Part shown: in pieces, positions 41,088 to 64,000 of the stretch | Layout: the number at the start of each line of letters is the position of its first letter | Position numbering within the stretch: the first letter of the stretch is position 1 | Made by a program: the position numbers and the translations under genes | The notes under the pieces: model-generated | Databases searched by the model: none | Told to the model about the DNA's origin: nothing | The model's input: only the letters and a program-made list of their open reading frames with translations | Assembly (NCBI GenBank): GCA_965649765.1 | Contig: OZ287755.1 | Location: 3,472,001-3,536,000 of the forward strand | Source of the DNA: Bispira polyomma | Lineage: Eukaryota | Direction of reading: 5' to 3' | DNA: 64,000 bases

Positions 41088-41519
41088 CTAGATATAGAAT
41101 TGTAGATAAAGATCTCTAGAGATAATGTGCACTATCGGTAGTGATGTTTGAACCTTGAAACACCCAAATGTTAATGTCCTGGCTTGTCAATTTAGTAAAC
41201 CATCAGATAAAATGATATGTGCAGAAAACTTAATTTTCTGGTAAACTCCAAAAATATAGTTTAAACTTGATACAGCCTTACTTAGTTTAAACTTTAGCAG
41301 TATAGTTTAAACTTAGATATATTTAGAAAATATTCAAATGGTACTGTATGGGAAAACGATTGTCATGATACTATAATAAACAGGTCTTCGGTATCCCATA
41401 TTTATGAGCATGATTTCTTACCAATTTAGTTAGGACACATAATTACTCAGGTATCTTCAATACATGGTATCCATTTAAATATAGGTTGTGTGGCCAATTA
41501 TTATTAGTTAAATAGTTAC

Positions 41520-42620
41520 ATTAATTGTAATTGTTTGGTTACATTGGAACATAATCACAACAGATGAATGTTCCTGAATGCAAGTTGCTTTGATTCTAAC
41601 AAAAACTTGCATAAATGATATTTTTTAATATAAATTATTAAATCATGTTGCTATACACATGTTTACAATAGGTAATATTGTTGTATGTTTAGCGATAGAC
41701 TGTGGGCCTTTATGCTGTGGTCACACTCAGTATGGTCGCGTTATGTCTTAATTTCCATAAAGGACAGAAATTAATGTGCAAAGCGTGGCAAATTCTGGGA
41801 AATGTAGCAAAAAAATCAATTGATGGGCTGTTTTGTACACGTTTGGTACGCATCTGTACATGTTTTGTACACACATTTAACATGTTTTAAAAGCCGTTTC
41901 TATTATGTTTGTGTTGTTAGCCATGTTTTAAAATATGTTAGCCACGTTTTGAAACCAATTTCGTTCTCGTTTTTAATCTTATTTGTATGTATAGTTTGTT
42001 TTACTCCCGTCCTTTAAGTCAAATTAGCATTGAATATGTGTAATACGTTTCCCGCAAACGCACCAACTGTTTCAGGAAAGTTTTCAGAAAACAGCTAAAA
42101 ACGTATCAAATTTCTAGCAGTCCGAAATTTAAGACGTTTTTTGAAAAAAACAGGATATTAAGGGTCCAACATACTCATGCATGCTTACGCTTACTTACCT
42201 ACACTACATTCTGCTAAAGTTTCATTACATTTTACCTTACGTTCGCAATTTTTTGTGCGTAATCGAAAAGTAAGCCCACTGTGACCACGGCATTAGACGC
42301 CCCAGATAATGGACAGATCTCTATTGTTGACACTACTTTTCCATCCACTGCCAACTACTCATGTGATCAGGGATACAAGAGAATGCTTCCTAAATGGTAA
42401 CTGGTCTACAATACGTGTCATCGTGTCATCGTGTAAAGGTAATTTAAAAACAACTTACACCTTTAAAATGTACCTCACATACTGTAATATTAGTATGGGC
42501 ACATCGCAAATTGAGTTTAAACACCTTACTGGTAAGCCTGTCTTTTTAGTGGTGTGGCTTTACTCGTGTGCCTCTGTATAAACAAAACAGCCAAACAAGC
42601 CAGACCATTACATTGTAAAA
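41520..42620 (+). pseudogene. inverted, disrupted copy of the 566-bp Sushi exon unit
   Basis: Exon 41693-42438 (tttag|CGATAGACTGTGG...GACGCCCCAGATAATGG...TGTAAAG|gtaatt) with flanking intron homology; MITE insertion and ~20-nt deletion. Confidence 0.9.
41713..42292. mobile_element. PIF/Harbinger MITE inside the Sushi pseudo-exon
   Basis: TIR TGCTGTGGTCACA / TGTGACCACGGCA; TSD TTA (41710-41712, 42293-42295); empty site visible in intact array units. Confidence 0.88.
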
Positions 42621-44859
42621 ATAAATGTTTCGAGTGCCACATACATTACCACATCATAGGGTGTGGGTATAATATAAATGTCGAAATATTGTCCCTTTTA
42701 ACATACACCAAGTGTTTATATGTCGTACATAGAGTTATTGATCCATCAAGTGTAAAAAGAAGTTAAGTGTTTTATATATCTATAACTATACAATATACGT
42801 GAATCTAAATGTACACATGTACACACCCCACAAATCCTATGACAGGGTCTCAACCGATGACACTATAAATAAATGAATAAAATTGTCAAAGACTTCTGAT
42901 GACAAATCTCCATCAAGCATTCCTTATTTCTTATTATCCTCTCCATTAACACAAAGTGTTATTTTACCAGCAGGCAAATATGTCCAACACAAGCATGAAA
43001 ACCATTAAGAAGTAGGATGCCGTTAAAATACTTTGGAAAATTACAGCTGTCAATCAGAAGACAGAAAGAAAAACAGCTGGTACAGGAGCTAGACGTTTTT
43101 GTGTGTCACAAACGGTTCAATTAATTTCTGTTTTTAAAAAATCGTTATAATTGTTTTACTAGTACAGTAGCTCTTCGTAGTGGTAGGTAGTGATATCCTA
43201 CTAGTAAAGGGTCCATTTTTTGCCCCCACTCCGTGTGAAAAAGTACCAACATCATCACGATAAGTCATGAAACGTCAGAAAAATATCACGTCGTCACATT
43301 CGACAATCCCTTTATGGAAATGACGTCACTTTGACACGAAACTACTACGCTTTTAGTGTATATTGCTTTTGTACGTTGATGGACGTTAACACGTGTAGGT
43401 GTGACCAGGCCATAATAACCGTCAAAACAAAGTATGTGGAGAGTACACAGCGAATATAAAGTTGTGAGAGATAGACATTTATTATCCACTGTGACGTAGG
43501 TGTGACGTTTCCGTGGCTGTAATACAATGAAGTGTATGACTGTGTGTATGTAAACTTTAGTAGTTACATGAATTTCCAATGTTTTTAATGCCCGGTTAAA
43601 TCAATATTTCAGATAGAAACTTTTTAAAAAGAGTGATTTACATAAAACATGGACCTTAAACCACATCATGGTATCTCAAACTTGATTTAGTGATTTATAA
43701 ATATGTGTTTGAATTTAATCTTTTATAGTAACAACTCTGAACTTGTTGGCTTCTATATTTGCATTGTGACGTACATAATGAATGTGACGTACATAATGAA
43801 AGGTTTTGTGACGTAAACAAAACTATACAAAGTTTTGGGTTGTTTTAATAAGGTTATAGTAAACAACTTAACCCATTAATTATTTAAAACTTTCAATGTA
43901 TATAAAATATAAGCAATATGCAATGTTATTCTGTACAAAACCCGATTTTAGAGTGGTAGAAGGGTTTTTGAAGATAATTCTTGAAGGTCACAACTCTTTT
44001 AGTTTATATTATGTAATTTGCCTTGAATTTCCAATATAAGCATAAGAATTATATTTTATAAATGGATAATAAAGGTAAAACAGCCCTTGTGATGTATATT
44101 AAAAAATATATATGTCTTAAAAAGATAAAACACACAATACTTGCCCTAGCGGGCTCGTATTGTACTGATGATCTTCTTTTGTCATATATTTTTTTAATAT
44201 ACACCAATTGGGAGTTTTACTATTGTATACTGATACCACATATCAATGCTCGAGTACAACCCCCACGTGACAAAAGATCAGACAAAACAATACTGTAGCT
44301 GGCCGCATGTTAATGTAAGTGGCGTGGGGTGTGACCTCAGAGCTCTGTAACCAATCAGAACTATGGTGCATTAGCTAAGCTAGAATGTGTAATGCCCGAA
44401 TAGAACAAGCGGTGTACATTTGTAGGGACACTATTTTTTTGTTTTTTTGTAAAACTGCTATAATCTAAAGAAGATATTACTTAATGTAGTATATCCTTCA
44501 ACACAGTTTTGTAACTTTATTCAGTAATTGTTGAGATAACCTAGCTATCCTTCATCCCGGCTATCCTATAAAAAGCTAAAGTAGTATGACCTACTATATT
44601 ATGTTTGCTTTTCAGTATAGTTTTGTTGTAGTTTGTTTAAAACCTATTTTTTATTCTCCATTTATATGTATATTTTTTTGTACGTTTTTGCTGTTTAAAA
44701 GAAGAAACAACCTGTTTTTCATTTCAATACCTCACACTAGCAGTAATAATGTTATGTTCTTCATTTCAGTGCCTCACAATTATACTGGTAATATTAAGAA
44801 TTCTTAATTCGTCTTCACAGAATACAGACAAAGAACTCTTGTAATAGGGATTTGATAAC

Positions 44860-55659: not shown

Positions 55660-55691
<32 letters not shown>

Positions 55692-55730: not shown

Positions 55731-55736
55731 TTTATT
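55731..55736 (-). promoter_or_regulatory. polyadenylation signal of the Sushi/cystine-knot gene
   Basis: AATAAA on minus strand 68 nt after the stop codon at 55804. Confidence 0.6.
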
Positions 55737-55803: not shown

Positions 55804-56253
55804 TCAAGGTAACAAACATCCACATGCTTGAGGCTTGTGGATAGTCATCTTCTTGCAGCTGTCCATCTTCACGAAGACTATGGTAAGACTGGAGCAGAAA
55901 GTGAGATTCTCTACACAGCTCTCCTCAGGTGTAGTACCACTCCTCTTACCTCTACGATGACTCTTGCTGCTCTTGGTACCCTTGTTACTCTTATGATGCC
56001 TTTTGGTGCCCTTCTTATTCTTATGATGACTCTTGGTACTCTTGGTACTTTTGATACTCTTGGTACTTTTGGTACTCTTGGTACTCTTGCTACTCTTGGT
56101 ACTCTTGCTACTTTTGGTACTCTTGCTACTTTTGGTACTTTTGGTACTCTTGGTACTTTTGGTACTCTTGGTACTTTTGGTACTCTTGCTATTGCTACCA
56201 CTATGAACAACACAATGATGGGTATGGTTACCATTAGGCTCAGCTGGTTCGAC
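55804..56253 (-). CDS. terminal exon: (S-T/S-K)n basic repeat plus cystine-knot C-terminus (..SC...PQACGC)
   Basis: Acceptor ttgtttttacag|GTC phase 0; open to TGA; followed by AATAAA. Confidence 0.85.
   Translation of the reverse strand, partial: VEPAEPNGNHTHHCVVHSGSNSKSTKSTKSTKSTKSTKSTKSSKSTKSSKSTKSSKSTKSTKSTKSIKSTKSTKSHHKNKKGTKRHHKSNKGTKSSKSHRRGKRSGTTPEESCVENLTFCSSLTIVFVKMDSCKKMTIHKPQACGCLLP
56030..56192 (-). repeat. 9-bp coding tandem repeat (AGTACCAAR/AGTAGCAAG) encoding STK/SSK
   Basis: About 16 units, synonymous AAA/AAG variation in the STK frame. Confidence 0.95.
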
Positions 56254-56659
56254 CTGTAAAAACAATAAATATTTGCAGCTATACATATATATCAAATTGA
56301 TACTAATGGGACACCCATTGCAGTGGTAACACCTGGTGATTACTTTTGTGTCTCTCGTTGACTCTCTTTGTCAACACTCACTCCTGTAATTATTATATGA
56401 CTGTTGCTATGGCTGCCACGTCTTGCTTATGTTTAGTTATATTTTATGTCATGTTCAAACCACATTCAATGGTGATACAAACTAGTGCTGAAGTACTCTG
56501 AACCACCGGCCTATGTTTACACTATGGGTTAACAGATTATGTTGTTTTGTTTGTGAAGATGCCCAGCATCAATAAAGTGTGATCATATGCATAATAGTAA
56601 TAATAATAATACAAGTAGCAGATTTCTTGCACAAAATAAGCTAAACTAAAACACCTCAC

Positions 56660-56754
56660 CGTGAAAGTTTCATTGTCATGCTTAAATATGACCTCTTTGA
56701 CACAAGAAGTTTGAACACAGAATTCTTTGAGGTGAAACTGCTGTCCTTGTTGAG
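56660..56754 (-). CDS. internal exon (phase 1 to 0): QQGQQFHLKEFCVQTSCVKEVIFKHDNETFT
   Basis: Acceptor ctttaatttag|, donor ACG|gtgagg, 95 nt, phases fit both neighbours. Confidence 0.75.
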
Positions 56755-57812
56755 CTAAATTAAAGGCAATATAAATATATTAAATAACAAGTCATGTATT
56801 ATGTTAAAGCTAATTTAATAACATATATTGTTTGACAAGCCACATATAAAAATGGCCACACCATTTTTTTATCAATCTATAAGCAAATATAAACTATTGC
56901 TTGAAACATTTTCACCTCCATTACACGAGAAAAAATCGAATGCTTAAAGTGTATAAAAATTCTGTTGCTTTTTAGTTTTCTATTTAGCTGACAGTTAAAA
57001 TATACTTTAATCAAAACAATTTTACCCATACCCCTGTTCTGTTACAAAGTTTTCTTTATTTAATCTATGTAGATAGAAATGATTTTTCAATTTTTTTTTC
57101 TTGTGTTTGGTATCTAGTTTTTAAGGAAATGGTTACAACTTTGTTAGAGTACAACAGCCAAAGTGGCTTTCCTTTCCAAAACAATTTGTGTGACACATTG
57201 CTTTTACATTATTTAGTTGATGCATACAATATTTCTTTATTGACGCATCTTTGTGGAATTTAATTTGGATTTCTGAACTGCAAACCACCATCATTGTTCT
57301 GTTAATTCATTGTCCAATTGTCTCTAACATGGACACCTATTACTGTTTCTGTAATGGACAGGTCACAAGAATGTACTGCTTTCATACACTTTGTATTAAT
57401 TAGTAGAAGATTGCAAACGTCCATGAAGCATTTTTTTTGCATACGGCTTACACCATTACAAAGTTCACTTGATGTTTACAATTTTATTTTACTTTTTTAA
57501 ATCGATTATTAGTACTATTACATTGTCATCTATCACTTTCTGCTCACGCCTTTACAACACAACAATTAACAACAATAAAACAAAAGGAAGACTTCAACCA
57601 TTTCACTGTTTACTTTCTTTATCAACAACACCCAAGTCACTGTTACAGAATGTAAGAGAAAGTAACATACCAAACGTAATACTTTGGCAATCCACTCGGT
57701 TAGAGATGAACAATCTATGATTAATTATTATGTGACTAAAATATTGACAAATTCAATACTTTTTATATTACTTCTATTACATAACCCCAACCCAGATCAA
57801 CTATAATCCTAC

Positions 57813-57956
57813 CATTAAGGGTGATTTCCACCTCATCTTCTTTAGTTTTGATCTTTTTCTTGCGAAAGTCACAGCGGATGTTGATATCAGAGGATGAATA
57901 TTCAAACTGTGTTTCACAGTTCCTTTTTGAGAAATGTATAGGGTCGTCACAAATTT
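57813..57956 (-). CDS. internal exon (phase 1 to 1): ICDDPIHFSKRNCETQFEYSSSDINIRCDFRKKKIKTKEDEVEITLN
   Basis: Acceptor cttttgatctccag|, donor AATG|gtagga, 144 nt open; an alternative donor at 57770 is possible. Confidence 0.7.
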
Positions 57957-58287
57957 CTGGAGATCAAAAGCAATTATTATTAATAATAAAGTATTCCCTT
58001 ATTCGTTTTCTAAGCACTGTCAAACAATTAGCATTTAGGCTGATTAAAATGTCCTACTACATGTACTATACTACATATCAAACCTTCAAATGAAGTTACA
58101 GTTATGTTTACAAAGTACTGGTCTGAATAGTTTAGCTGCTTTGTTTATACAGAGGCAGACAAGTGAAACCACATCCCTAAAATGACAGGCTTACTAGTAA
58201 GATGTTTAAACTCAATTTGTGATGTGCTCATACTAATATTACAGTATTTGAGGTACATTTTAATGGTGTAAGTTGTTTTTAAATTAC

Positions 58288-58461
58288 CTTTGCACAACGG
58301 CTCTGTCAAAGACCAGTTACCATTTGGTAAGCATTCTCTTGTAGGAGTACCACTGAGGATATATCCTTGATCACACGAGTAGTTGGCAGTGGATGGAAAA
58401 GTGGTGTCACCAATAGAGATCTCTCCATTATCTGGGGCGTCTAAAGATCCACAGTCTATTG
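58288..58461 (-). CDS. Sushi/CCP domain exon (3'-most)
   Basis: 174-nt phase 1-1 exon tttag|CAATA..AAAG|gtaatt; C..P.NG..Y.C..GY...G...C...G.W....P.C consensus. Confidence 0.92.
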
Positions 58462-58853
58462 CTAAATATACAACAATATTACCTAATGTAAACATGTGTA
58501 TAACAATGTGATTTTATAATTGATATTAAAAATATCTCATTACTACATGTTTTTGTTAGAATCAAATCAACATGCATTCAGGAACATTCATCTAATGTGA
58601 TTGTAACCAAGCAATTACTGTTAATATAACATTCTAAATAGCATGTTATTAACATGGACATCAACAACAATTTTTGCTATGTAATGGTCTGGCTAGTTTA
58701 AATGTTTTGTTTATACAGAGGCAGACAAGTGAAACCACATCCCTAAAATGACAGGCTTACTAGTAAGATGTTTAAACTCAATTTGTGATGTGCTCATACT
58801 AATATTACAGTATTTGAGGTACATTTTAATGGTGTAAGTTGTTTTTAAATTAC

Positions 58854-59027
58854 CTTTGCACAACGGCTCTGTCAAAGACCAGTTACCATTTGGTAAGCAT
58901 TCTCTTGTAGGAGTACCACTGAGGATATATCCTTGATCACACGAGTAGTTGGCAGTGGATGGAAAAGTGGTGTCACCAATAGAGATCTCTCCATTATCTG
59001 GGGCGTCTAAAGATCCACAGTCTATTG
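58854..59027 (-). CDS. Sushi/CCP domain exon
   Basis: Same splice sites and consensus, +566. Confidence 0.9.
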
Positions 59028-59419
59028 CTAAATATACAACAATATTACCTAATGTAAACATGTGTATAACAATGTGATTTTATAATTGATATTAAAAATA
59101 TCTCATTACTACATGTTTTTGTTAGAATCAAATCAACTTGCATTCAGGAACATTCATCTAATGTGATTGTAACCAAGCAATTACTGTTAATATAACATTC
59201 TAAATAGCATGTTATTAAGATGGACATCAACAACAATTTTTGCTATGTAATGGTCTGGCTAGTTTAGATGTTTTGTTTATACAGAGGCAGGCAAGTGAAA
59301 CCACATCCCTAAAATGACAGGCTTACTAGTAAGATGTTTAAACTCAATTTGTGATGTGCCCATACTAATATTACAGTATTTGAGGTACATTTTAGTGGTG
59401 TAATTTGTTTTTATATTAC

Positions 59420-59593
59420 CTTGACACAAAGGCTCTGTCAAAGACCAGTTACCACTTGGTAAGCATTCTCTTGTAGGAGTACCACTGAGGATATATCCTT
59501 GATCACACGAGTAGTTGGCAGTGGATGGAAAAGTGGTGTCACCAATAGAGATCTCTCCATTATCTGGGGCGTCTAAAGATCCACAGTCTATTG
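59420..59593 (-). CDS. Sushi/CCP domain exon
   Basis: Same; CLPSG/CQ variant. Confidence 0.9.
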
Positions 59594-59985
59594 CTAAATA
59601 TACAACAATATTACCTAATGTAAACATGTGTATAACAATGTGATTTTATAATTGATATTAAAAAGATCTCATTACTACATGTTTTTGTTAGAATCAAATC
59701 AACTTGCATTCAGGAACATTCATCTAATGTGATTGTAACCAAGCAATTACTGTTAATATAACATTCTAAATAGCATGTTATTAACATGGACATCAACAAC
59801 AATTTTTGCTATGTAATGGTCTGGCTAGTTTAGATGTTTTGTTTATACAGAGGCAGGCAAGTGAAACCACATCCCTAAAATGACAGGCTTACTAGTAAGA
59901 TGTTTAAACTCAATTTGTGATGTGCCCATACTAATATTACAGTATTTGAGGTACATTTTAGTGGTGTAATTTGTTTTTATATTAC

Positions 59986-60159
59986 CTTGACACAAAGGCT
60001 CTGTCAAAGACCAGTTACCACTTGGTAAGCATTCTCTTGTAGGAGTACCACTGAGGATATATCCTTGATCACACGAGTAGTTGGCAGTGGATGGAAAAGT
60101 GGTGTCACCAATAGAGATCTCTCCATTATCTGGGGCGTCTAAAGATCCACAGTCTATTG
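59986..60159 (-). CDS. Sushi/CCP domain exon
   Basis: Same; CLPSG/CQ variant. Confidence 0.9.
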
Positions 60160-60551
60160 CTAAATATACAACAATATTACCTAATGTAAACATGTGTATA
60201 ACAATGTGATTTTATAATTGATATTAAAAAGATCTCATTACTACATGTTTTTGTTAGAATCAAATCAACTTGCATTCAGGAACATTCATCTAATGTGATT
60301 GTAACCAAGCAATTACTGTTAATATAACATTCTAAATAGCATGTTATTAAGATGGACATCAACAACAATTTTTGCTATGTAATGGTCTGGCTAGTTTAGA
60401 TGTTTTGTTTATACAGAGGCAGGCAAGTGAAACCACATCCCTAAAATGACAGGCTTACTAGTAAGATGTTTAAACTCAATTTGTGATGTGCCCATACTAA
60501 TATTACAGTATTTGAGGTACATTTTAGTGGTGTAATTTGTTTTTATATTAC

Positions 60552-60725
60552 CTTGACACAAAGGCTCTGTCAAAGACCAGTTACCACTTGGTAAGCATTC
60601 TCTTGTAGGAGTACCACTGAGGATATATCCTTGATCACACGAGTAGTTGGCAGTGGATGGAAAAGTGGTGTCACCAATAGAGATCTCTCCATTATCTGGG
60701 GCGTCTAAAGATCCACAGTCTATTG
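60552..60725 (-). CDS. Sushi/CCP domain exon
   Basis: Same; CLPSG/CQ variant. Confidence 0.9.
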
Positions 60726-61117
60726 CTAAATATACAACAATATTACCTAATGTAAACATGTGTATAACAATGTGATTTTATAATTGATATTAAAAATATC
60801 TCATTACTACATGTTTTTGTTAGAATCAAATCAACTTGCATTCAGGAACATTCATCTAATGTGATTGTAACCAAGTAATTACTGTTAATATAACATTTTA
60901 AATAGCATGTTATTAACATGGACATCAACAACAATTTTTGCTATGTAATGGTCTGGCTAGTTTAGATGTTTTATTTATACAGAGGCAGACAAGTGAAACC
61001 ACATCCCTAAAATGACAGGCTTACTGGTAAGATGTTTAAACTCAATTTATGATGTGCCCATACTAATATTACAGTATTTGAGGTACATTTTAGTGGTGTA
61101 ATTTGTTTTTATATTAC

Positions 61118-61291
61118 CTTGACACAATGGCTCTGTCAAAGACCAGTTACCATTTGGTAAGCATTCTCTTGTAGGAGTACCACTGAGGATATATCCTTGA
61201 TCACACGAGTAGTTGGCAGTGGATGGAAAAGTGGTGTCACCAATAGAGATCTCTCCATTATCTGGGGCGTCTAAAGATCCACAGTCTATTG
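61118..61291 (-). CDS. Sushi/CCP domain exon
   Basis: Same; CLPNG/CQ variant; the ORF-shortening stop lies in the intron. Confidence 0.9.
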
Positions 61292-61683
61292 CTAAATATA
61301 CAACAATATTACCTAATGTAAACATGTGTATAACAATGTGATTTTATAATTGATATTAAAAATATCTCATTACTACATGTTTTTGTTAGAATCAAATCAA
61401 CTTGCATTCAGGAACATTCATCTAATGTGATTGTAACCAAGCAATTACTGTTAATATAACATTTTAAATAGCATGTTATTAACATGGACATCAACAACAA
61501 TTTTTGCTATGTAATGGTCTGGCTAGTTTAGATGTTTTATTTATACAGAGGCAGACAAGTGAAACCACATCCCTAAAATGACAGGCTTACTAGTAAGATG
61601 TTTAAACTCAATTTGTGATGTGCCCATACTAATATTACAGTATTTGAGGTACATTTTAGTGGTGTAATTTGTTTTTATATTAC

Positions 61684-61857
61684 CTTGACACAACGGCTCT
61701 GTCAAAGACCAGTTACCATTTGGTAAGCATTCTCTTGTAGGAGTACCACTGAGGATATATCCTTGATCACACGAGTAGTTGGCAGTGGATGGAAAAGTGG
61801 TGACACCAATAGAGATCTCTCCATTATCTGGGGCGTCTAAAGATCCACAGTCTATTG
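61684..61857 (-). CDS. Sushi/CCP domain exon
   Basis: Same; GVTT variant. Confidence 0.9.
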
Positions 61858-62249
61858 CTAAATATACAACAATATTACCTAATGTAAACATGTGTATAAC
61901 AATGTGATTTTATAATTGATATTAAAAATATCTCATTACTACATGTTTTTGTTAGAATCAAATCAACTTGCATTCAGGAACATTCATCTAATGTGATTGT
62001 AACCAAGCAATTACTGTTAATATAACATTTTAAATAGCATGTTATTAACATGGACATCAACAACAATTTTTGCTATGTAATGGTCTGGCTAGTTTAGATG
62101 TTATGTTTATACAGAGGCAGACAAGTGAAACCACATCCCTAAAATGACAGGCTTACTGGTAAGATGTTTAAACTCAATTTGTGATGTGCCCATACTAATA
62201 TTACAGTATTTGAGGTACATTTTAGTGGTGTAATTTGTTTTTATATTAC

Positions 62250-62423
62250 CTTGACACAAAGGCTCTGTCAAAGACCAGTTACCACTTGGTAAGCATTCTC
62301 TTGCAGGAGTACCACTGAGGATATATCCTTGATCACACGAGTAGTTGGCAGTGGATGGAAAAGTGGTGTCACCAATAGAGATCTCTCCATTATCTGGGGC
62401 GTCTAAAGATCCACAGTCTATTG
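62250..62423 (-). CDS. Sushi/CCP domain exon
   Basis: Same; TPARE/CLPSG variant. Confidence 0.9.
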
Positions 62424-62815
62424 CTAAATATACAACAATATTACCTAATGTAAACATGTGTATAACAATGTGATTTTATAATTGATATTAAAAAGATCTC
62501 ATTACTACATGTTTTTGTTAGAATCAAATCAACTTGCATTCAGGAACATTCATCTAATGTGATTGTAACCAAGCAATTACTGTTAATATAACATTTGAAA
62601 TAGCATGTTATTAACATGGACATCAACAACAATTTTTGCTATGTAATGGTCTGGCTAGTTTAGATGTTTTATTTATACAGAGGCAGACAAGTGAAACCAC
62701 ATCCCTAAAATGACAGGCTTACTAGTAAGATGTTTAAACTCAATTTGTGATGTGCCCATACTAATATTACAGTATTTGAGGTACATTTTAGTGGTGTAAT
62801 TTGTTTTTATATTAC

Positions 62816-62989
62816 CTTGACACAAAGGCTCTGTCAAAGACCAGTTACCACTTGGTAAGCATTCTCTTGCAGGAGTACCACTGAGGATATATCCTTGATC
62901 ACACGAGTAGTTGGCAGTGGATGGAAAAGTGGTGTCACCAATAGAGATCTCTCCATTATCTGGGGCGTCTAAAGATCCACAGTCTATTG
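62816..62989 (-). CDS. Sushi/CCP domain exon
   Basis: Same; TPARE/CLPSG variant. Confidence 0.9.
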
Positions 62990-63381
62990 CTAAATATACA
63001 ACAATATTACCTAATGTAAACATGTGTATAACAATGTGATTTTATAATTGATATTAAAAAGATCTCATTACTACATGTTTTTGTTAGAATCAAATCAACT
63101 TGCATTCAGGAACATTCATCTAATGTGATTGTAACCAAGCAATTACTGTTAATATAACATTTGAAATAGCATGTTATTAACATGGACATCAACAACAATT
63201 TTTGCTATGTAATGGTCTGGCTAGTTTAGATGTTTTATTTATACAGAGGCAGACAAGTGAAACCACATCCCTAAAATGACAGGCTTACTAGTAAGATGTT
63301 TAAACTCAATTTGTGATGTGCCCATACTAATATTACAGTATTTGAGGTACATTTTAGTGGTGTAATTTGTTTTTATATTAC

Positions 63382-63555
63382 CTTGACACAACGGCTCTGT
63401 CAAAGACCAGTTACCATTTGGTAAGCATTCTCTTGTAGGAGTACCACTGAGGATATATCCTTGATCACACGAGTAGTTGGCAGTGGATGGAAAAGTGGTG
63501 TCACCAATAGAGATCTCTCCATTATCTGGGGCGTCTAAAGATCCACAGTCTATTG
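63382..63555 (-). CDS. Sushi/CCP domain exon
   Basis: Same; CLPNG/CQ variant. Confidence 0.9.
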
Positions 63556-63947
63556 CTAAATATACAACAATATTACCTAATGTAAACATGTGTATAACAA
63601 TGTGATTTTATAATTGATATTAAAAAGATCTCATTACTACATGTTTTTGTTAGAATCAAATCAACTTGCATTCAGGAACATTCATCTAATGTGATTGTAA
63701 CCAAGCAATTACTGTTAATATAACATTTTAAATAGCATGTTATTAACATGGACATCAACAACAATTTTTGCTATGTAATGGTCTGGCTAGTTTAGATGTT
63801 TTGTTTATACAGAAGCAGACAAGTGAAACCATATCACTAAAATGACAGGCTTACTGGTAAGATGTTTAAACTCAATTTGTGATGTGCCCATACTAATATT
63901 ACAGTATTTGAGGTACATTTTAGTGGTGTAATTTGTTTTTATATTAC

Positions 63948-64000
63948 CTTGACACAAAGGCTCTGTCAAAGACCAGTTACCACTTGGTAAGCATTCTCTT
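63948..64000 (-). CDS. Sushi/CCP domain exon (partial, cut by window edge)
   Basis: 3' part RECLPSGNWSLTEPLCQ and donor at 63946-63947. Confidence 0.85.

What the first reader, a model, noticed from the sequence alone, without database searches (positions are those of the whole stretch)
55804..64000. Unusual protein architecture: long poly-Sushi stalk ending in a Spaetzle/neurotrophin-like cystine knot
Seen: phase-compatible splicing 58288 to 57956-57813 to 56754-56660 to 56253-55804 gives (Sushi)n-EICDDP..RCDFRKK..QQFHLKEFCVQTSCV..[STK insert]..SCVENLTFCSSL..MTIHKPQACGC. The order C...Q-x4-E-x-C-x4-C...C...P-x-x-C-x-C resembles cystine-knot cytokines of the Spaetzle/NGF/IL-17 type (my pattern recognition, not a search result). 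A complement-control repeat rod joined to a dimerising cytokine-like knot is not an architecture I recognise. It could be a secreted immune, adhesive or matrix protein.
Basis: partly seen in the sequence, partly recalled or inferred. Interest (0 to 1): 0.82.

Follow-up and report, generated by a model that had tools for sequence, protein, structure and literature searches.

The report
Secreted poly-Sushi protein, orphan non-knot tail
This is a complete invertebrate gene for a long secreted protein of 16 near-identical Sushi modules, and its cysteine-rich end piece is predicted to be a compact beta-sandwich carrying a very positively charged loop, not a Spaetzle/NGF-type cystine knot.

Summary
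On the minus strand, 174-nt phase 1-1 Sushi exons repeat every 566 bp: 10 full units and part of an eleventh in the window, 16 in all. They are followed by three unique exons, 57956-57813, 56754-56660 and 56253-55804. All junctions are canonical. A signal-peptide exon lies about 3.4 kb beyond the window, giving a model of about 1181 aa.

The cystine-knot reading is not supported.
- Sequence searches: the tail has no Pfam or PDB match. A search of 1.84 billion representative proteins gave only three spurious hits.
- Conserved cysteines: distant paralogs lack the first Cys of the "CGC" motif and the "HHC" Cys.
- Structure: AlphaFold2 (pLDDT 76.8, pTM 0.71) gives an eight-strand beta-sandwich. 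Its nearest solved folds are jelly-roll modules (IFT25, GOLD, DOC, CBM32; Z about 8), and no knot cytokine is in the top 50.

The Ser/Thr/Lys insert (93 aa, net +31) sits in a disordered loop. That loop ranges from 17 to 918 residues among paralogs, and RRGKR is not conserved.

The tail is under purifying selection (dN/dS 0.26-0.32). No RNA data were available, so function (an extended protein binding negatively charged targets) is inferred. The scan noted the array and the insert before, on this same stretch.

The parts
58288..64000 (-). Sushi (CCP) exon array. Each 566-bp unit holds one 174-nt phase 1-1 exon and a 392-nt intron. Exon starts are at 58461 + 566n. There are 10 full units and the 3' part of an eleventh in the window. 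Six exon starts lie beyond it, up to window-equivalent 66951 (L006:2951), making 16 in all.
   Evidence: Pfam Sushi E 4.1e-12. PDB CCP matches. Exon and intron divergence between units are 1.0% and 1.4%, with 5 nonsynonymous and 2 synonymous variable sites.
57813..57956 (-). Tail exon 2, entered and left in phase 1. It encodes (E)ICDDPIHFSKRNCETQFEYSSSDINIRCDFRKKKIKTKEDEVEITLN and holds 3 Cys. Its second half supplies the first two strands of the predicted beta-sandwich.
   Evidence: Dropping these strands lowers model confidence.
56660..56754 (-). Tail exon 3, phase 1 to 0. It encodes (A)QQGQQFHLKEFCVQTSCVKEVIFKHDNETFT and forms a long beta-hairpin with the C-x4-C pair. It is conserved even in the distant paralogs.
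55804..56253 (-). Tail exon 4, 149 codons plus the TGA stop at 55806-55804. It consists of the VEPAEP..HHC head, the low-complexity insert, and the conserved 40-aa end TPEESCVENLTFCSSLTIVFVKMDSCKKMTIHKPQACGCL.
55933..56205 (-). Polycationic Ser/Thr/Lys(/His) insert. Between HCxx and EESC there are 93 aa: 31 K+R, 0 D+E, 46 S+T and 6 H. The DNA is a 9/27-nt tandem repeat. The insert maps to the disordered loop of the model.
55942..55956 (-). RRGKR, a possible proprotein-convertase motif at the end of the insert. It is not conserved among paralogs.
   Evidence: Sequence. Paralog comparison.
55731..55736 (-). AATAAA polyadenylation signal, 67 nt after the stop codon.

Best explanation
This is a complete, probably functional gene of an unidentified invertebrate (1.04-Gb genome) for a secreted protein of about 1181 aa.

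Exon 1 lies just outside the window (L006:3397-3469, minus strand). It encodes a hydrophobic signal peptide, MKLLLMLFVIICQGPTYGHTVIGP.

Sixteen near-identical Sushi/CCP modules follow, each on its own phase 1-1 exon. They should form a long, semi-flexible rod. The module number changes easily by unequal exchange between the 566-bp exon-plus-intron units.

The last three exons encode a family-specific, disulfide-rich C-terminal domain with 11 Cys. It is predicted to be a compact eight-strand beta-sandwich, not a cystine knot.

One surface loop of that domain has been expanded by a 9-nt repeat into a 93-aa Ser/Thr/Lys tract with net charge +31.

Inferred mechanism (not shown): the rod holds out a C-terminal binding module whose polycationic loop sticks electrostatically to polyanionic targets. 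Candidates are microbial envelopes, sulfated glycans, nucleic acids, or an acidic matrix or mineral. This is analogous to the lysine-rich loop of the aberrant fifth CCP domain of beta2-glycoprotein I (established knowledge). Both the reach (Sushi number) and the stickiness (loop length) evolve quickly among paralogs.
For: Gene model
- All 19 introns use AG/GT with matching phases, and there is a single open reading frame.
- The signal-peptide exon is conserved in paralogs.
- AATAAA follows the stop.
- The intronless paralog shows the same joins.

Selection
- dN/dS of the tail exons is 0.26-0.32 between the three paralogs compared here.

Fold
- AlphaFold2 gives pLDDT 76.8 and pTM 0.71, with about 90 in the strands. 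The insert site is a loop with pLDDT below 50.
- The best VIA matches are Z 8.6 to IFT25, 8.2 to the TMED1 GOLD domain, 8.1 to the HERC2 DOC domain and 7.9 to a CBM32, all at rmsd 2.3-2.6 A over 88-95 residues.

Loop
- Loop length is 17, 49, 49, 51, 93 and 918 residues in six family members. It is almost free of acidic residues in all but the shortest.

Orphan status
- No Pfam or PDB match.
- The word search found nothing.
- The search of 1.84e9 representatives gave only 3 hits, to bacterial cadherin/Ig repeat proteins and one other unrelated long protein.
Against: - There is no transcript evidence. The only runs that hold the stretch are DNA.
- Differences between array units look neutral: 5 nonsynonymous against 2 synonymous sites, and exon divergence of 1.0% against 1.4% in introns. 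The array is therefore very young or homogenised, and its length is not shown to be selected.
- The fold rests on a 14-row alignment of same-genome paralogs. ESMFold2 could not fold the chain confidently.
- Z of about 8 is what models without a true match typically score (note).
- The folded piece lacks the first 27 tail residues, which hold two Cys.
- No binding, localisation or expression data exist, so the function is pure inference.
Confidence: 0.6

Rival explanations
1. One reading: the tail is a Spaetzle/NGF/IL-17-type cystine-knot cytokine module, released or activated by cleavage at RRGKR, which dimerises at the end of a Sushi rod.
For: - The tail holds 11 cysteines, an odd number.
- There is a C-x4-C pair in exon 3 and a C-G-C at the very C-terminus.
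- Long beta-hairpins are predicted.
- An R-X-K-R motif lies upstream of the last five Cys.
Against: - No knot family matches in Pfam at E <= 10.
- The first Cys of CGC and the HHC Cys are absent in the C11 and C4 paralogs.
- The model is a globular eight-strand sandwich, and no knot cytokine is in the top 50 structural neighbours.
- RRGKR is not conserved.
- Only 5 Cys lie downstream of the motif, too few for a free-standing knot.
- The dimer test gave no verdict.
Confidence: 0.06
2. The locus is a recently amplified, unexpressed or decaying family member, and the open frame persists only because the array is young.
For: - No RNA evidence.
- Variation between array units looks neutral.
- The family includes clear pseudogenes: the C5:15.29 Mb pair with a shared TAA, and the rearranged C9 copy.
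- A degenerate inverted copy of the unit lies 16 kb away in the window.
Against: - All 20 exons are open with canonical splice sites. The start codon, signal peptide, stop and AATAAA are all in place.
- The tail exons show purifying selection against paralogs.
Confidence: 0.15
3. The tail is a very divergent member of a known jelly-roll binding module (galactose-binding-like/CBM32/discoidin, GOLD or CUB-like). It acts as a lectin, and the charged loop is only a glycosylated spacer.
For: - Structural neighbours at Z 7-8.6 include CBM32, discoidin-like, GOLD and DOC domains.
- The distant paralogs place the tail after a Sushi and a calcium-binding EGF module. From established knowledge, that is a context where CUB-type modules are common.
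Against: - No sequence or profile match to any such family.
- Z of about 8 is in the background range.
- No CUB chain is in the top 50.
- No sugar-binding residues can be named.
Confidence: 0.15

Closest known systems
Spaetzle / NGF / coagulogen growth-factor cystine-knot cytokines
   Same: A secreted, Cys-rich, all-beta C-terminal piece. A basic motif lies upstream of the last cysteines, and the sequence ends in C-x-C.
   Different: No profile match. The C-x-C is not conserved in the family. The predicted fold is a globular eight-strand sandwich, not two-finger knot architecture. The insert sits inside the domain rather than between a pro-domain and the knot.
Beta2-glycoprotein I (four CCPs plus an aberrant fifth domain with a lysine-rich membrane-binding loop)
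   Same: A CCP rod ending in an atypical C-terminal domain that carries a polycationic loop. The Sushi exon also hits beta2-GPI by sequence (E 1e-13).
   Different: The tail here is not a CCP: it has no Trp, no CCP Cys pattern and no Pfam hit. The loop is 93 aa of S/T/K repeat, not a short CKNKEKKC-type loop. The analogy is functional and untested.
Complement receptor 1 / factor H type long CCP arrays
   Same: Many tandem CCP modules, one per phase 1-1 exon. The array is built from near-identical genomic units, like the CR1 long homologous repeats whose number varies by unequal crossing-over (established knowledge). The best PDB sequence hit is CR1.
   Different: There are 16 almost identical single-module units of 566 bp. 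There is no transmembrane region or known complement-binding signature, and the C-terminal domain is an orphan.
C-terminal cystine-knot (CTCK) domains of mucins, von Willebrand factor and Slit
   Same: A Cys-rich domain at the extreme C-terminus of a long repetitive secreted protein, with an odd Cys count.
   Different: No C-x-G-x-C or CC motifs, no Pfam Cys_knot hit, and a predicted beta-sandwich fold.
Jelly-roll beta-sandwich modules (IFT25/galactose-binding-like, GOLD, DOC, CBM32)
   Same: These are the best structural neighbours of the model: Z 7.9-8.6, rmsd 2.3-2.6 A, 88-95 residues aligned.
   Different: Sequence identity is only 8-13% with no profile match. The scores are in the range the tool calls a common arrangement. 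The tail is extracellular and rich in disulfides.

Membership tests
Growth-factor cystine knot (Spaetzle PF16077, NGF PF00243, Cys_knot PF00007, IL17 PF06083, coagulin and others) | Profile or sequence match to a knot family | tested here: not met
   hmmscan of each tail exon and of the contiguous 127-aa tail at E <= 10 found no knot family. No PDB sequence match.
Growth-factor cystine knot | Six knot cysteines, including the terminal C-x-C, conserved across the family | tested here: not met
   The distant paralogs on C11 and C4 read EGC and KGC in place of CGC, and they lack the HHC Cys. Only six Cys are family-wide: C-x4-C, C-x6-C, C and C.
Growth-factor cystine knot | Elongated two-finger beta fold resembling solved knot cytokines | tested here: not met
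   The AF2 model is an eight-strand compact sandwich with pTM 0.71. Foldseek against the PDB found nothing at E <= 1e-3. The VIA wide top 50 are all jelly-roll or sandwich modules.
Growth-factor cystine knot | One disulfide threaded through a ring made by two others | not testable with these tools
   Model coordinates are not returned, and there is no experimental disulfide map.
Growth-factor cystine knot | Homodimerisation | tested here: inconclusive
   Complex prediction with two copies returned no answer: score 0.00, with the chain's own fold uncertain.
Sushi / CCP / SCR (PF00084) | Pfam score above the gathering cut-off, four Cys plus the conserved Trp, one module per phase 1-1 exon | tested here: met
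   46.8 bits against a cut-off of 20.7, E 4.1e-12. The sequence IDC..YSC..REC..NWS..PLC has the expected pattern. PDB hits to CR1, CR2, C2 and beta2-GPI.
CTCK (mucin/vWF C-terminal knot) | C-x-G-x-C and CC motifs; Pfam or SMART CT match | tested here: not met
   The motifs are absent from the sequence, and there is no Pfam hit.
Galactose-binding-like / GOLD / DOC jelly-roll modules | Significant structural similarity over the whole domain, plus a family profile match | tested here: inconclusive
   Z 7.9-8.6 over 88-95 residues, but the tool's own background is Z 7-8. There is no profile match.

The most novel reading that the evidence does not exclude
The tail is a previously undescribed extracellular beta-sandwich domain family. 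One surface loop serves as an expandable platform for polycationic repeats, ranging from 17 to 918 residues among paralogs. It is combined with a Sushi rod whose module number varies independently (1-2, at least 10, and 16 in different paralogs). That would make it a secreted adhesion or recognition protein with two separately tunable properties, reach and charge, both evolving by repeat slippage and unequal exchange.
Probability: 0.3. Interest if true: 0.6.

Novelty: new variant of a known kind. Interest (0 to 1): 0.38.

Why it matters
The striking claim, a complement-type rod fused to a dimerising cytokine knot, does not survive testing, so no new cytokine class is indicated.

What remains is a clean example of a lineage-restricted extracellular gene family with three features:
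- An orphan disulfide-rich C-terminal domain with no relatives among 1.84 billion representative proteins.
- A loop in that domain that tolerates polycationic expansions from tens to about 900 residues.
- Sushi arrays amplified independently in each paralog as exon-plus-intron macrosatellites.

If the gene is expressed, it is a candidate for charge-based adhesion, matrix or microbe binding in this animal. It would also be a useful case for studying how repeat instability tunes extracellular proteins. The partly intronless paralog is a tidy natural record of the family's splice junctions.

Tried and rejected
- **Joined model left out.** The spliced protein was not sent to any search or folding tool. 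Exons were searched one by one by reference. The contiguous 127-aa open frame of the intronless paralog (L009:3051-3431:-) stood in for the joined tail. Its first 27 tail residues, which hold two Cys, lie before an in-frame TAA and were not folded.
- **Alignments.** MAFFT alignments A1 and A2 of short exon fragments were misaligned and discarded. A3 and A4 were used instead.
- **Word search.** The tail, searched inside the 999-aa C9 exon, gave 0 hits.
- **ESM Atlas.** By features, the best score was 0.77, to IBR zinc-finger clusters; this is noise. By shape, TM was at most 0.59 to assorted sandwiches.
- **Big HMMER search.** The three hits were two bacterial cadherin/Ig repeat proteins and one other unrelated long protein. 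They were rejected as spurious.
- **RNA evidence.** The only holders are three runs of unrecorded kind. Their contigs run straight through the introns, so they are DNA and show no joints.
- **Dimer test.** Complex prediction gave no answer, so it counts neither for nor against dimerisation.
- **Minimal core.** Folding exon 3 + exon 4 without the exon-2 strands gave a weaker model (pLDDT 66.2, pTM 0.54). This suggests the domain starts in exon 2.
- **Organism.** Attempts to identify it through earlier scan notes failed.
- **Literature.** Two word searches found no description of such an architecture, but they were unfocused because the taxon is unknown.
- **Retrocopy dN/dS.** These values were not used, because the tail alignment was off by one codon.
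Full report
**Observation**

The window is G000:C8:3472001-3536000 of a 1.04-Gb genome. GC is about 35%, and the sequence has typical metazoan introns and retroelements. The organism could not be named.

Read on the minus strand, the region 58288-64000 is a tandem array with an exact 566-bp period. Each unit holds one 174-nt exon flanked by TTTAG| and |GTAAT, entered and left in phase 1.
- The exon translates to a textbook Sushi/CCP module: Pfam PF00084, E 4.1e-12, 46.8 bits against a cut-off of 20.7.
- It has PDB sequence matches to CR1, CR2, C2, beta2-glycoprotein I and selectins.

I fetched the next 30 kb of the contig. The array has 16 units, ending at window-equivalent 66951.

A further exon lies upstream, at L006:3469-3397 on the minus strand.
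- It starts with ATG and encodes MKLLLMLFVIICQGPTYGHTVIGP.
- It ends at a CCAG|GTTAAGT donor in phase 1.
- The same signal-peptide exon stands upstream of three paralogs.

They are 57956-57813, 56754-56660 and 56253-55804. An AATAAA lies 67 nt after the stop.

The model has 20 exons and 3543 coding nt, giving 1181 aa.

**Junction support**

No RNA run holds the stretch. The three runs that do are DNA: one 1998-nt contig runs through two introns with no differences and no joints. The 566-bp unit stands at about 9-16 times the depth of the unique part. That fits a many-copy array, although the tool warns that depth is not a copy number.

The junctions are supported another way. The genome holds a family of these tails.
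- Three intact close paralogs lie at C8:37.51 Mb, C5:55.55 Mb and C12:34.87 Mb. They have the same three exons and the same splice positions.
- A copy at C5:15.29 Mb, with an inverted duplicate at 15.30 Mb, has the last Sushi, exon 2, exon 3 and exon 4 fused in one frame without introns.
- That copy reads ...EPSCEGICDDH......EISLNAPPGQKF... and ...GDFMVEPAVP....
- It keeps its upstream intron and carries a shared in-frame TAA. It therefore looks like a 3'-biased intron-loss copy that later decayed. The mechanism is my inference.

**What the tail is not**

I searched each exon by reference, and used the naturally contiguous 127-aa open frame of the intronless paralog (64-75% identical to the window's exons).

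Sequence searches found nothing.
- No Pfam family matches at E <= 10, so none of the cystine-knot families does.
- No PDB sequence matches.
- A word search through proteins of 550-1750 aa found nothing.
- The exhaustive HMMER search of 1.84 billion representatives returned three hits at E 5e-8 to 5e-4. They were two bacterial cadherin/Ig repeat proteins and one other unrelated long protein, which I reject.

The tail is therefore an orphan at this sensitivity. Relatives below roughly 45% identity over such a short domain would not have passed the threshold.

Cysteine conservation also argues against a knot.
- The window's tail has 11 Cys.
- Two distant paralogs, on C11 and C4, have the arrangement Sushi, calcium-binding EGF, then tail.
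- They keep only six of the cysteines (C-x4-C, C-x6-C, C and C).
- They read EGC and KGC where the window has CGC, and they lack the HHC cysteine.
It probably pairs with the HHC Cys, since the two appear and disappear together (inference).

**What the tail looks like**

AlphaFold2 on the 127-aa piece, with a 14-row paralog alignment (A3), gave mean pLDDT 76.8 and pTM 0.71. It predicts eight strands at about 90 pLDDT and one disordered loop at residues 66-79.
- Foldseek found no PDB match at E <= 1e-3.
- The exhaustive VIA search of 48,161 chains put jelly-roll/sandwich modules first: IFT25 at Z 8.6, TMED1 GOLD at 8.2, HERC2 DOC at 8.1 and a CBM32 at 7.9, with rmsd 2.3-2.6 A over 88-95 residues.
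- No NGF, Spaetzle, coagulogen, TGF-beta, PDGF or IL-17 chain is in the top 50.
- The Atlas shape search agreed only loosely, with TM at most 0.59.
- Removing the 20 exon-2 residues lowered confidence to pLDDT 66.2 and pTM 0.54. The domain therefore begins in exon 2.

Caveats:
- The alignment is shallow.
- ESMFold2 did not fold the chain confidently.
- Z of about 8 is the tool's stated background.
- The first 27 tail residues were not modelled.

I therefore call the fold a compact disulfide-stapled beta-sandwich of unassigned family. I do not call it a member of any named one.

**The insert**

The 9/27-nt repeat at 55960-56188 encodes a 93-aa tract between HHCVV and EESC.
- It holds 31 K+R, no D or E, 46 S+T and 6 H.
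- It maps exactly to the disordered loop of the model.

In the family, the same loop is 17 aa in the intronless copy, 49-51 aa in three paralogs, and 918 aa in the C9 exon. The C9 version consists of SHHKGKKGTKGTK repeats.

RRGKR is present here, and RRRGNR is in the C12 paralog. The others have KGKK, KSTK or nothing. Convertase cleavage is therefore possible but is not a family feature. If it occurs, the two chains would stay disulfide-linked, because the site lies inside the domain.

**Selection and dynamics**

The tail exons are under purifying selection: dN/dS is 0.26, 0.29 and 0.32 among the three paralogs compared.

The array units differ by 1.0% in exons and 1.4% in introns, with 5 nonsynonymous and 2 synonymous variable sites. 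They are very young or homogenised.

Each paralog has its own homogenised array:
- one Sushi at C8:37.51 Mb,
- two at C5:55.55 Mb,
- at least ten identical-protein exons on a 1252-bp period at C12,
- sixteen here.

**Mechanism**

Shown:
- a complete open gene model with a signal peptide,
- a CCP array,
- an orphan tail under constraint,
- a polycationic loop of hypervariable length.

Inferred: the product is a secreted, rod-like protein whose C-terminal sandwich is a binding or anchoring module. The cationic loop adds non-specific electrostatic affinity for polyanionic targets. This resembles the way the lysine-rich loop of domain V lets beta2-glycoprotein I bind anionic surfaces (established knowledge, not tested here).

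The odd Cys count leaves room for an intermolecular disulfide. The dimer job gave no verdict.

**Verdict**

- Observation: confirmed.
- Architecture: real and unlisted in the libraries searched.
- Cystine-knot cytokine reading: not supported.
- Novelty: a new variant of the multi-CCP secreted proteins, with an orphan C-terminal domain.
- Interest: moderate. It rests mainly on the expandable loop and the double repeat instability, and is held down by the lack of any expression or functional data.

The scan had already noted the 566-bp array (s1-577506) and the STK insert (s1-577520) on this same stretch.

Noticed in passing
window 41515-42622: A degenerate copy of the 566-bp Sushi unit in inverted orientation, 82% identical. 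It is split by about 600 bp of other sequence, and its Sushi pseudo-exon (42290-42407, + strand) is frameshifted.
   Followed up: partly
L011:4194-7190 (G000:C9:6914193-6917189, minus): A 999-codon open frame made almost wholly of SHHKGKKGTKGTK repeats and ending in the conserved tail. A second frame of the same repeat is also open for 951 codons. No exon 3 was found nearby. A signal exon, one Sushi and a partial exon 2 lie 15 kb away on the other strand (L012), so the locus looks rearranged.
   Followed up: partly
L009 and L010 (G000:C5:15.292 Mb and 15.302 Mb): An inverted duplicate of a partly intronless family member with a shared in-frame TAA. Its upstream exon fuses a signal-peptide-like stretch, a peritrophin-A-like Cys domain and a Sushi. 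The CBM_14 match is E 0.0034, 17.9 bits, below the 22.1 cut-off.
   Followed up: partly
L017 + L020 (G000:C12:34.871-34.883 Mb): An independent homogenised Sushi array in a paralog. At least ten exons encode the identical 57-aa module on a 1252-bp period, with one spacing of 1886 bp.
   Followed up: partly
window 56518-56612 (intron between tail exons 3 and 4): This stretch matches dozens of places across the genome at 75-83% identity, so it is a dispersed repeat and not part of the gene family.
   Followed up: no
L007-L008 (window-equivalent about 82000-86500, minus strand): Long open frames typical of a LINE (endonuclease and reverse-transcriptase-like) lie about 15 kb upstream of the gene's first exon.
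   Followed up: no
window 55663-55691: A perfect (GT)14 microsatellite just after the polyadenylation signal.
   Followed up: no
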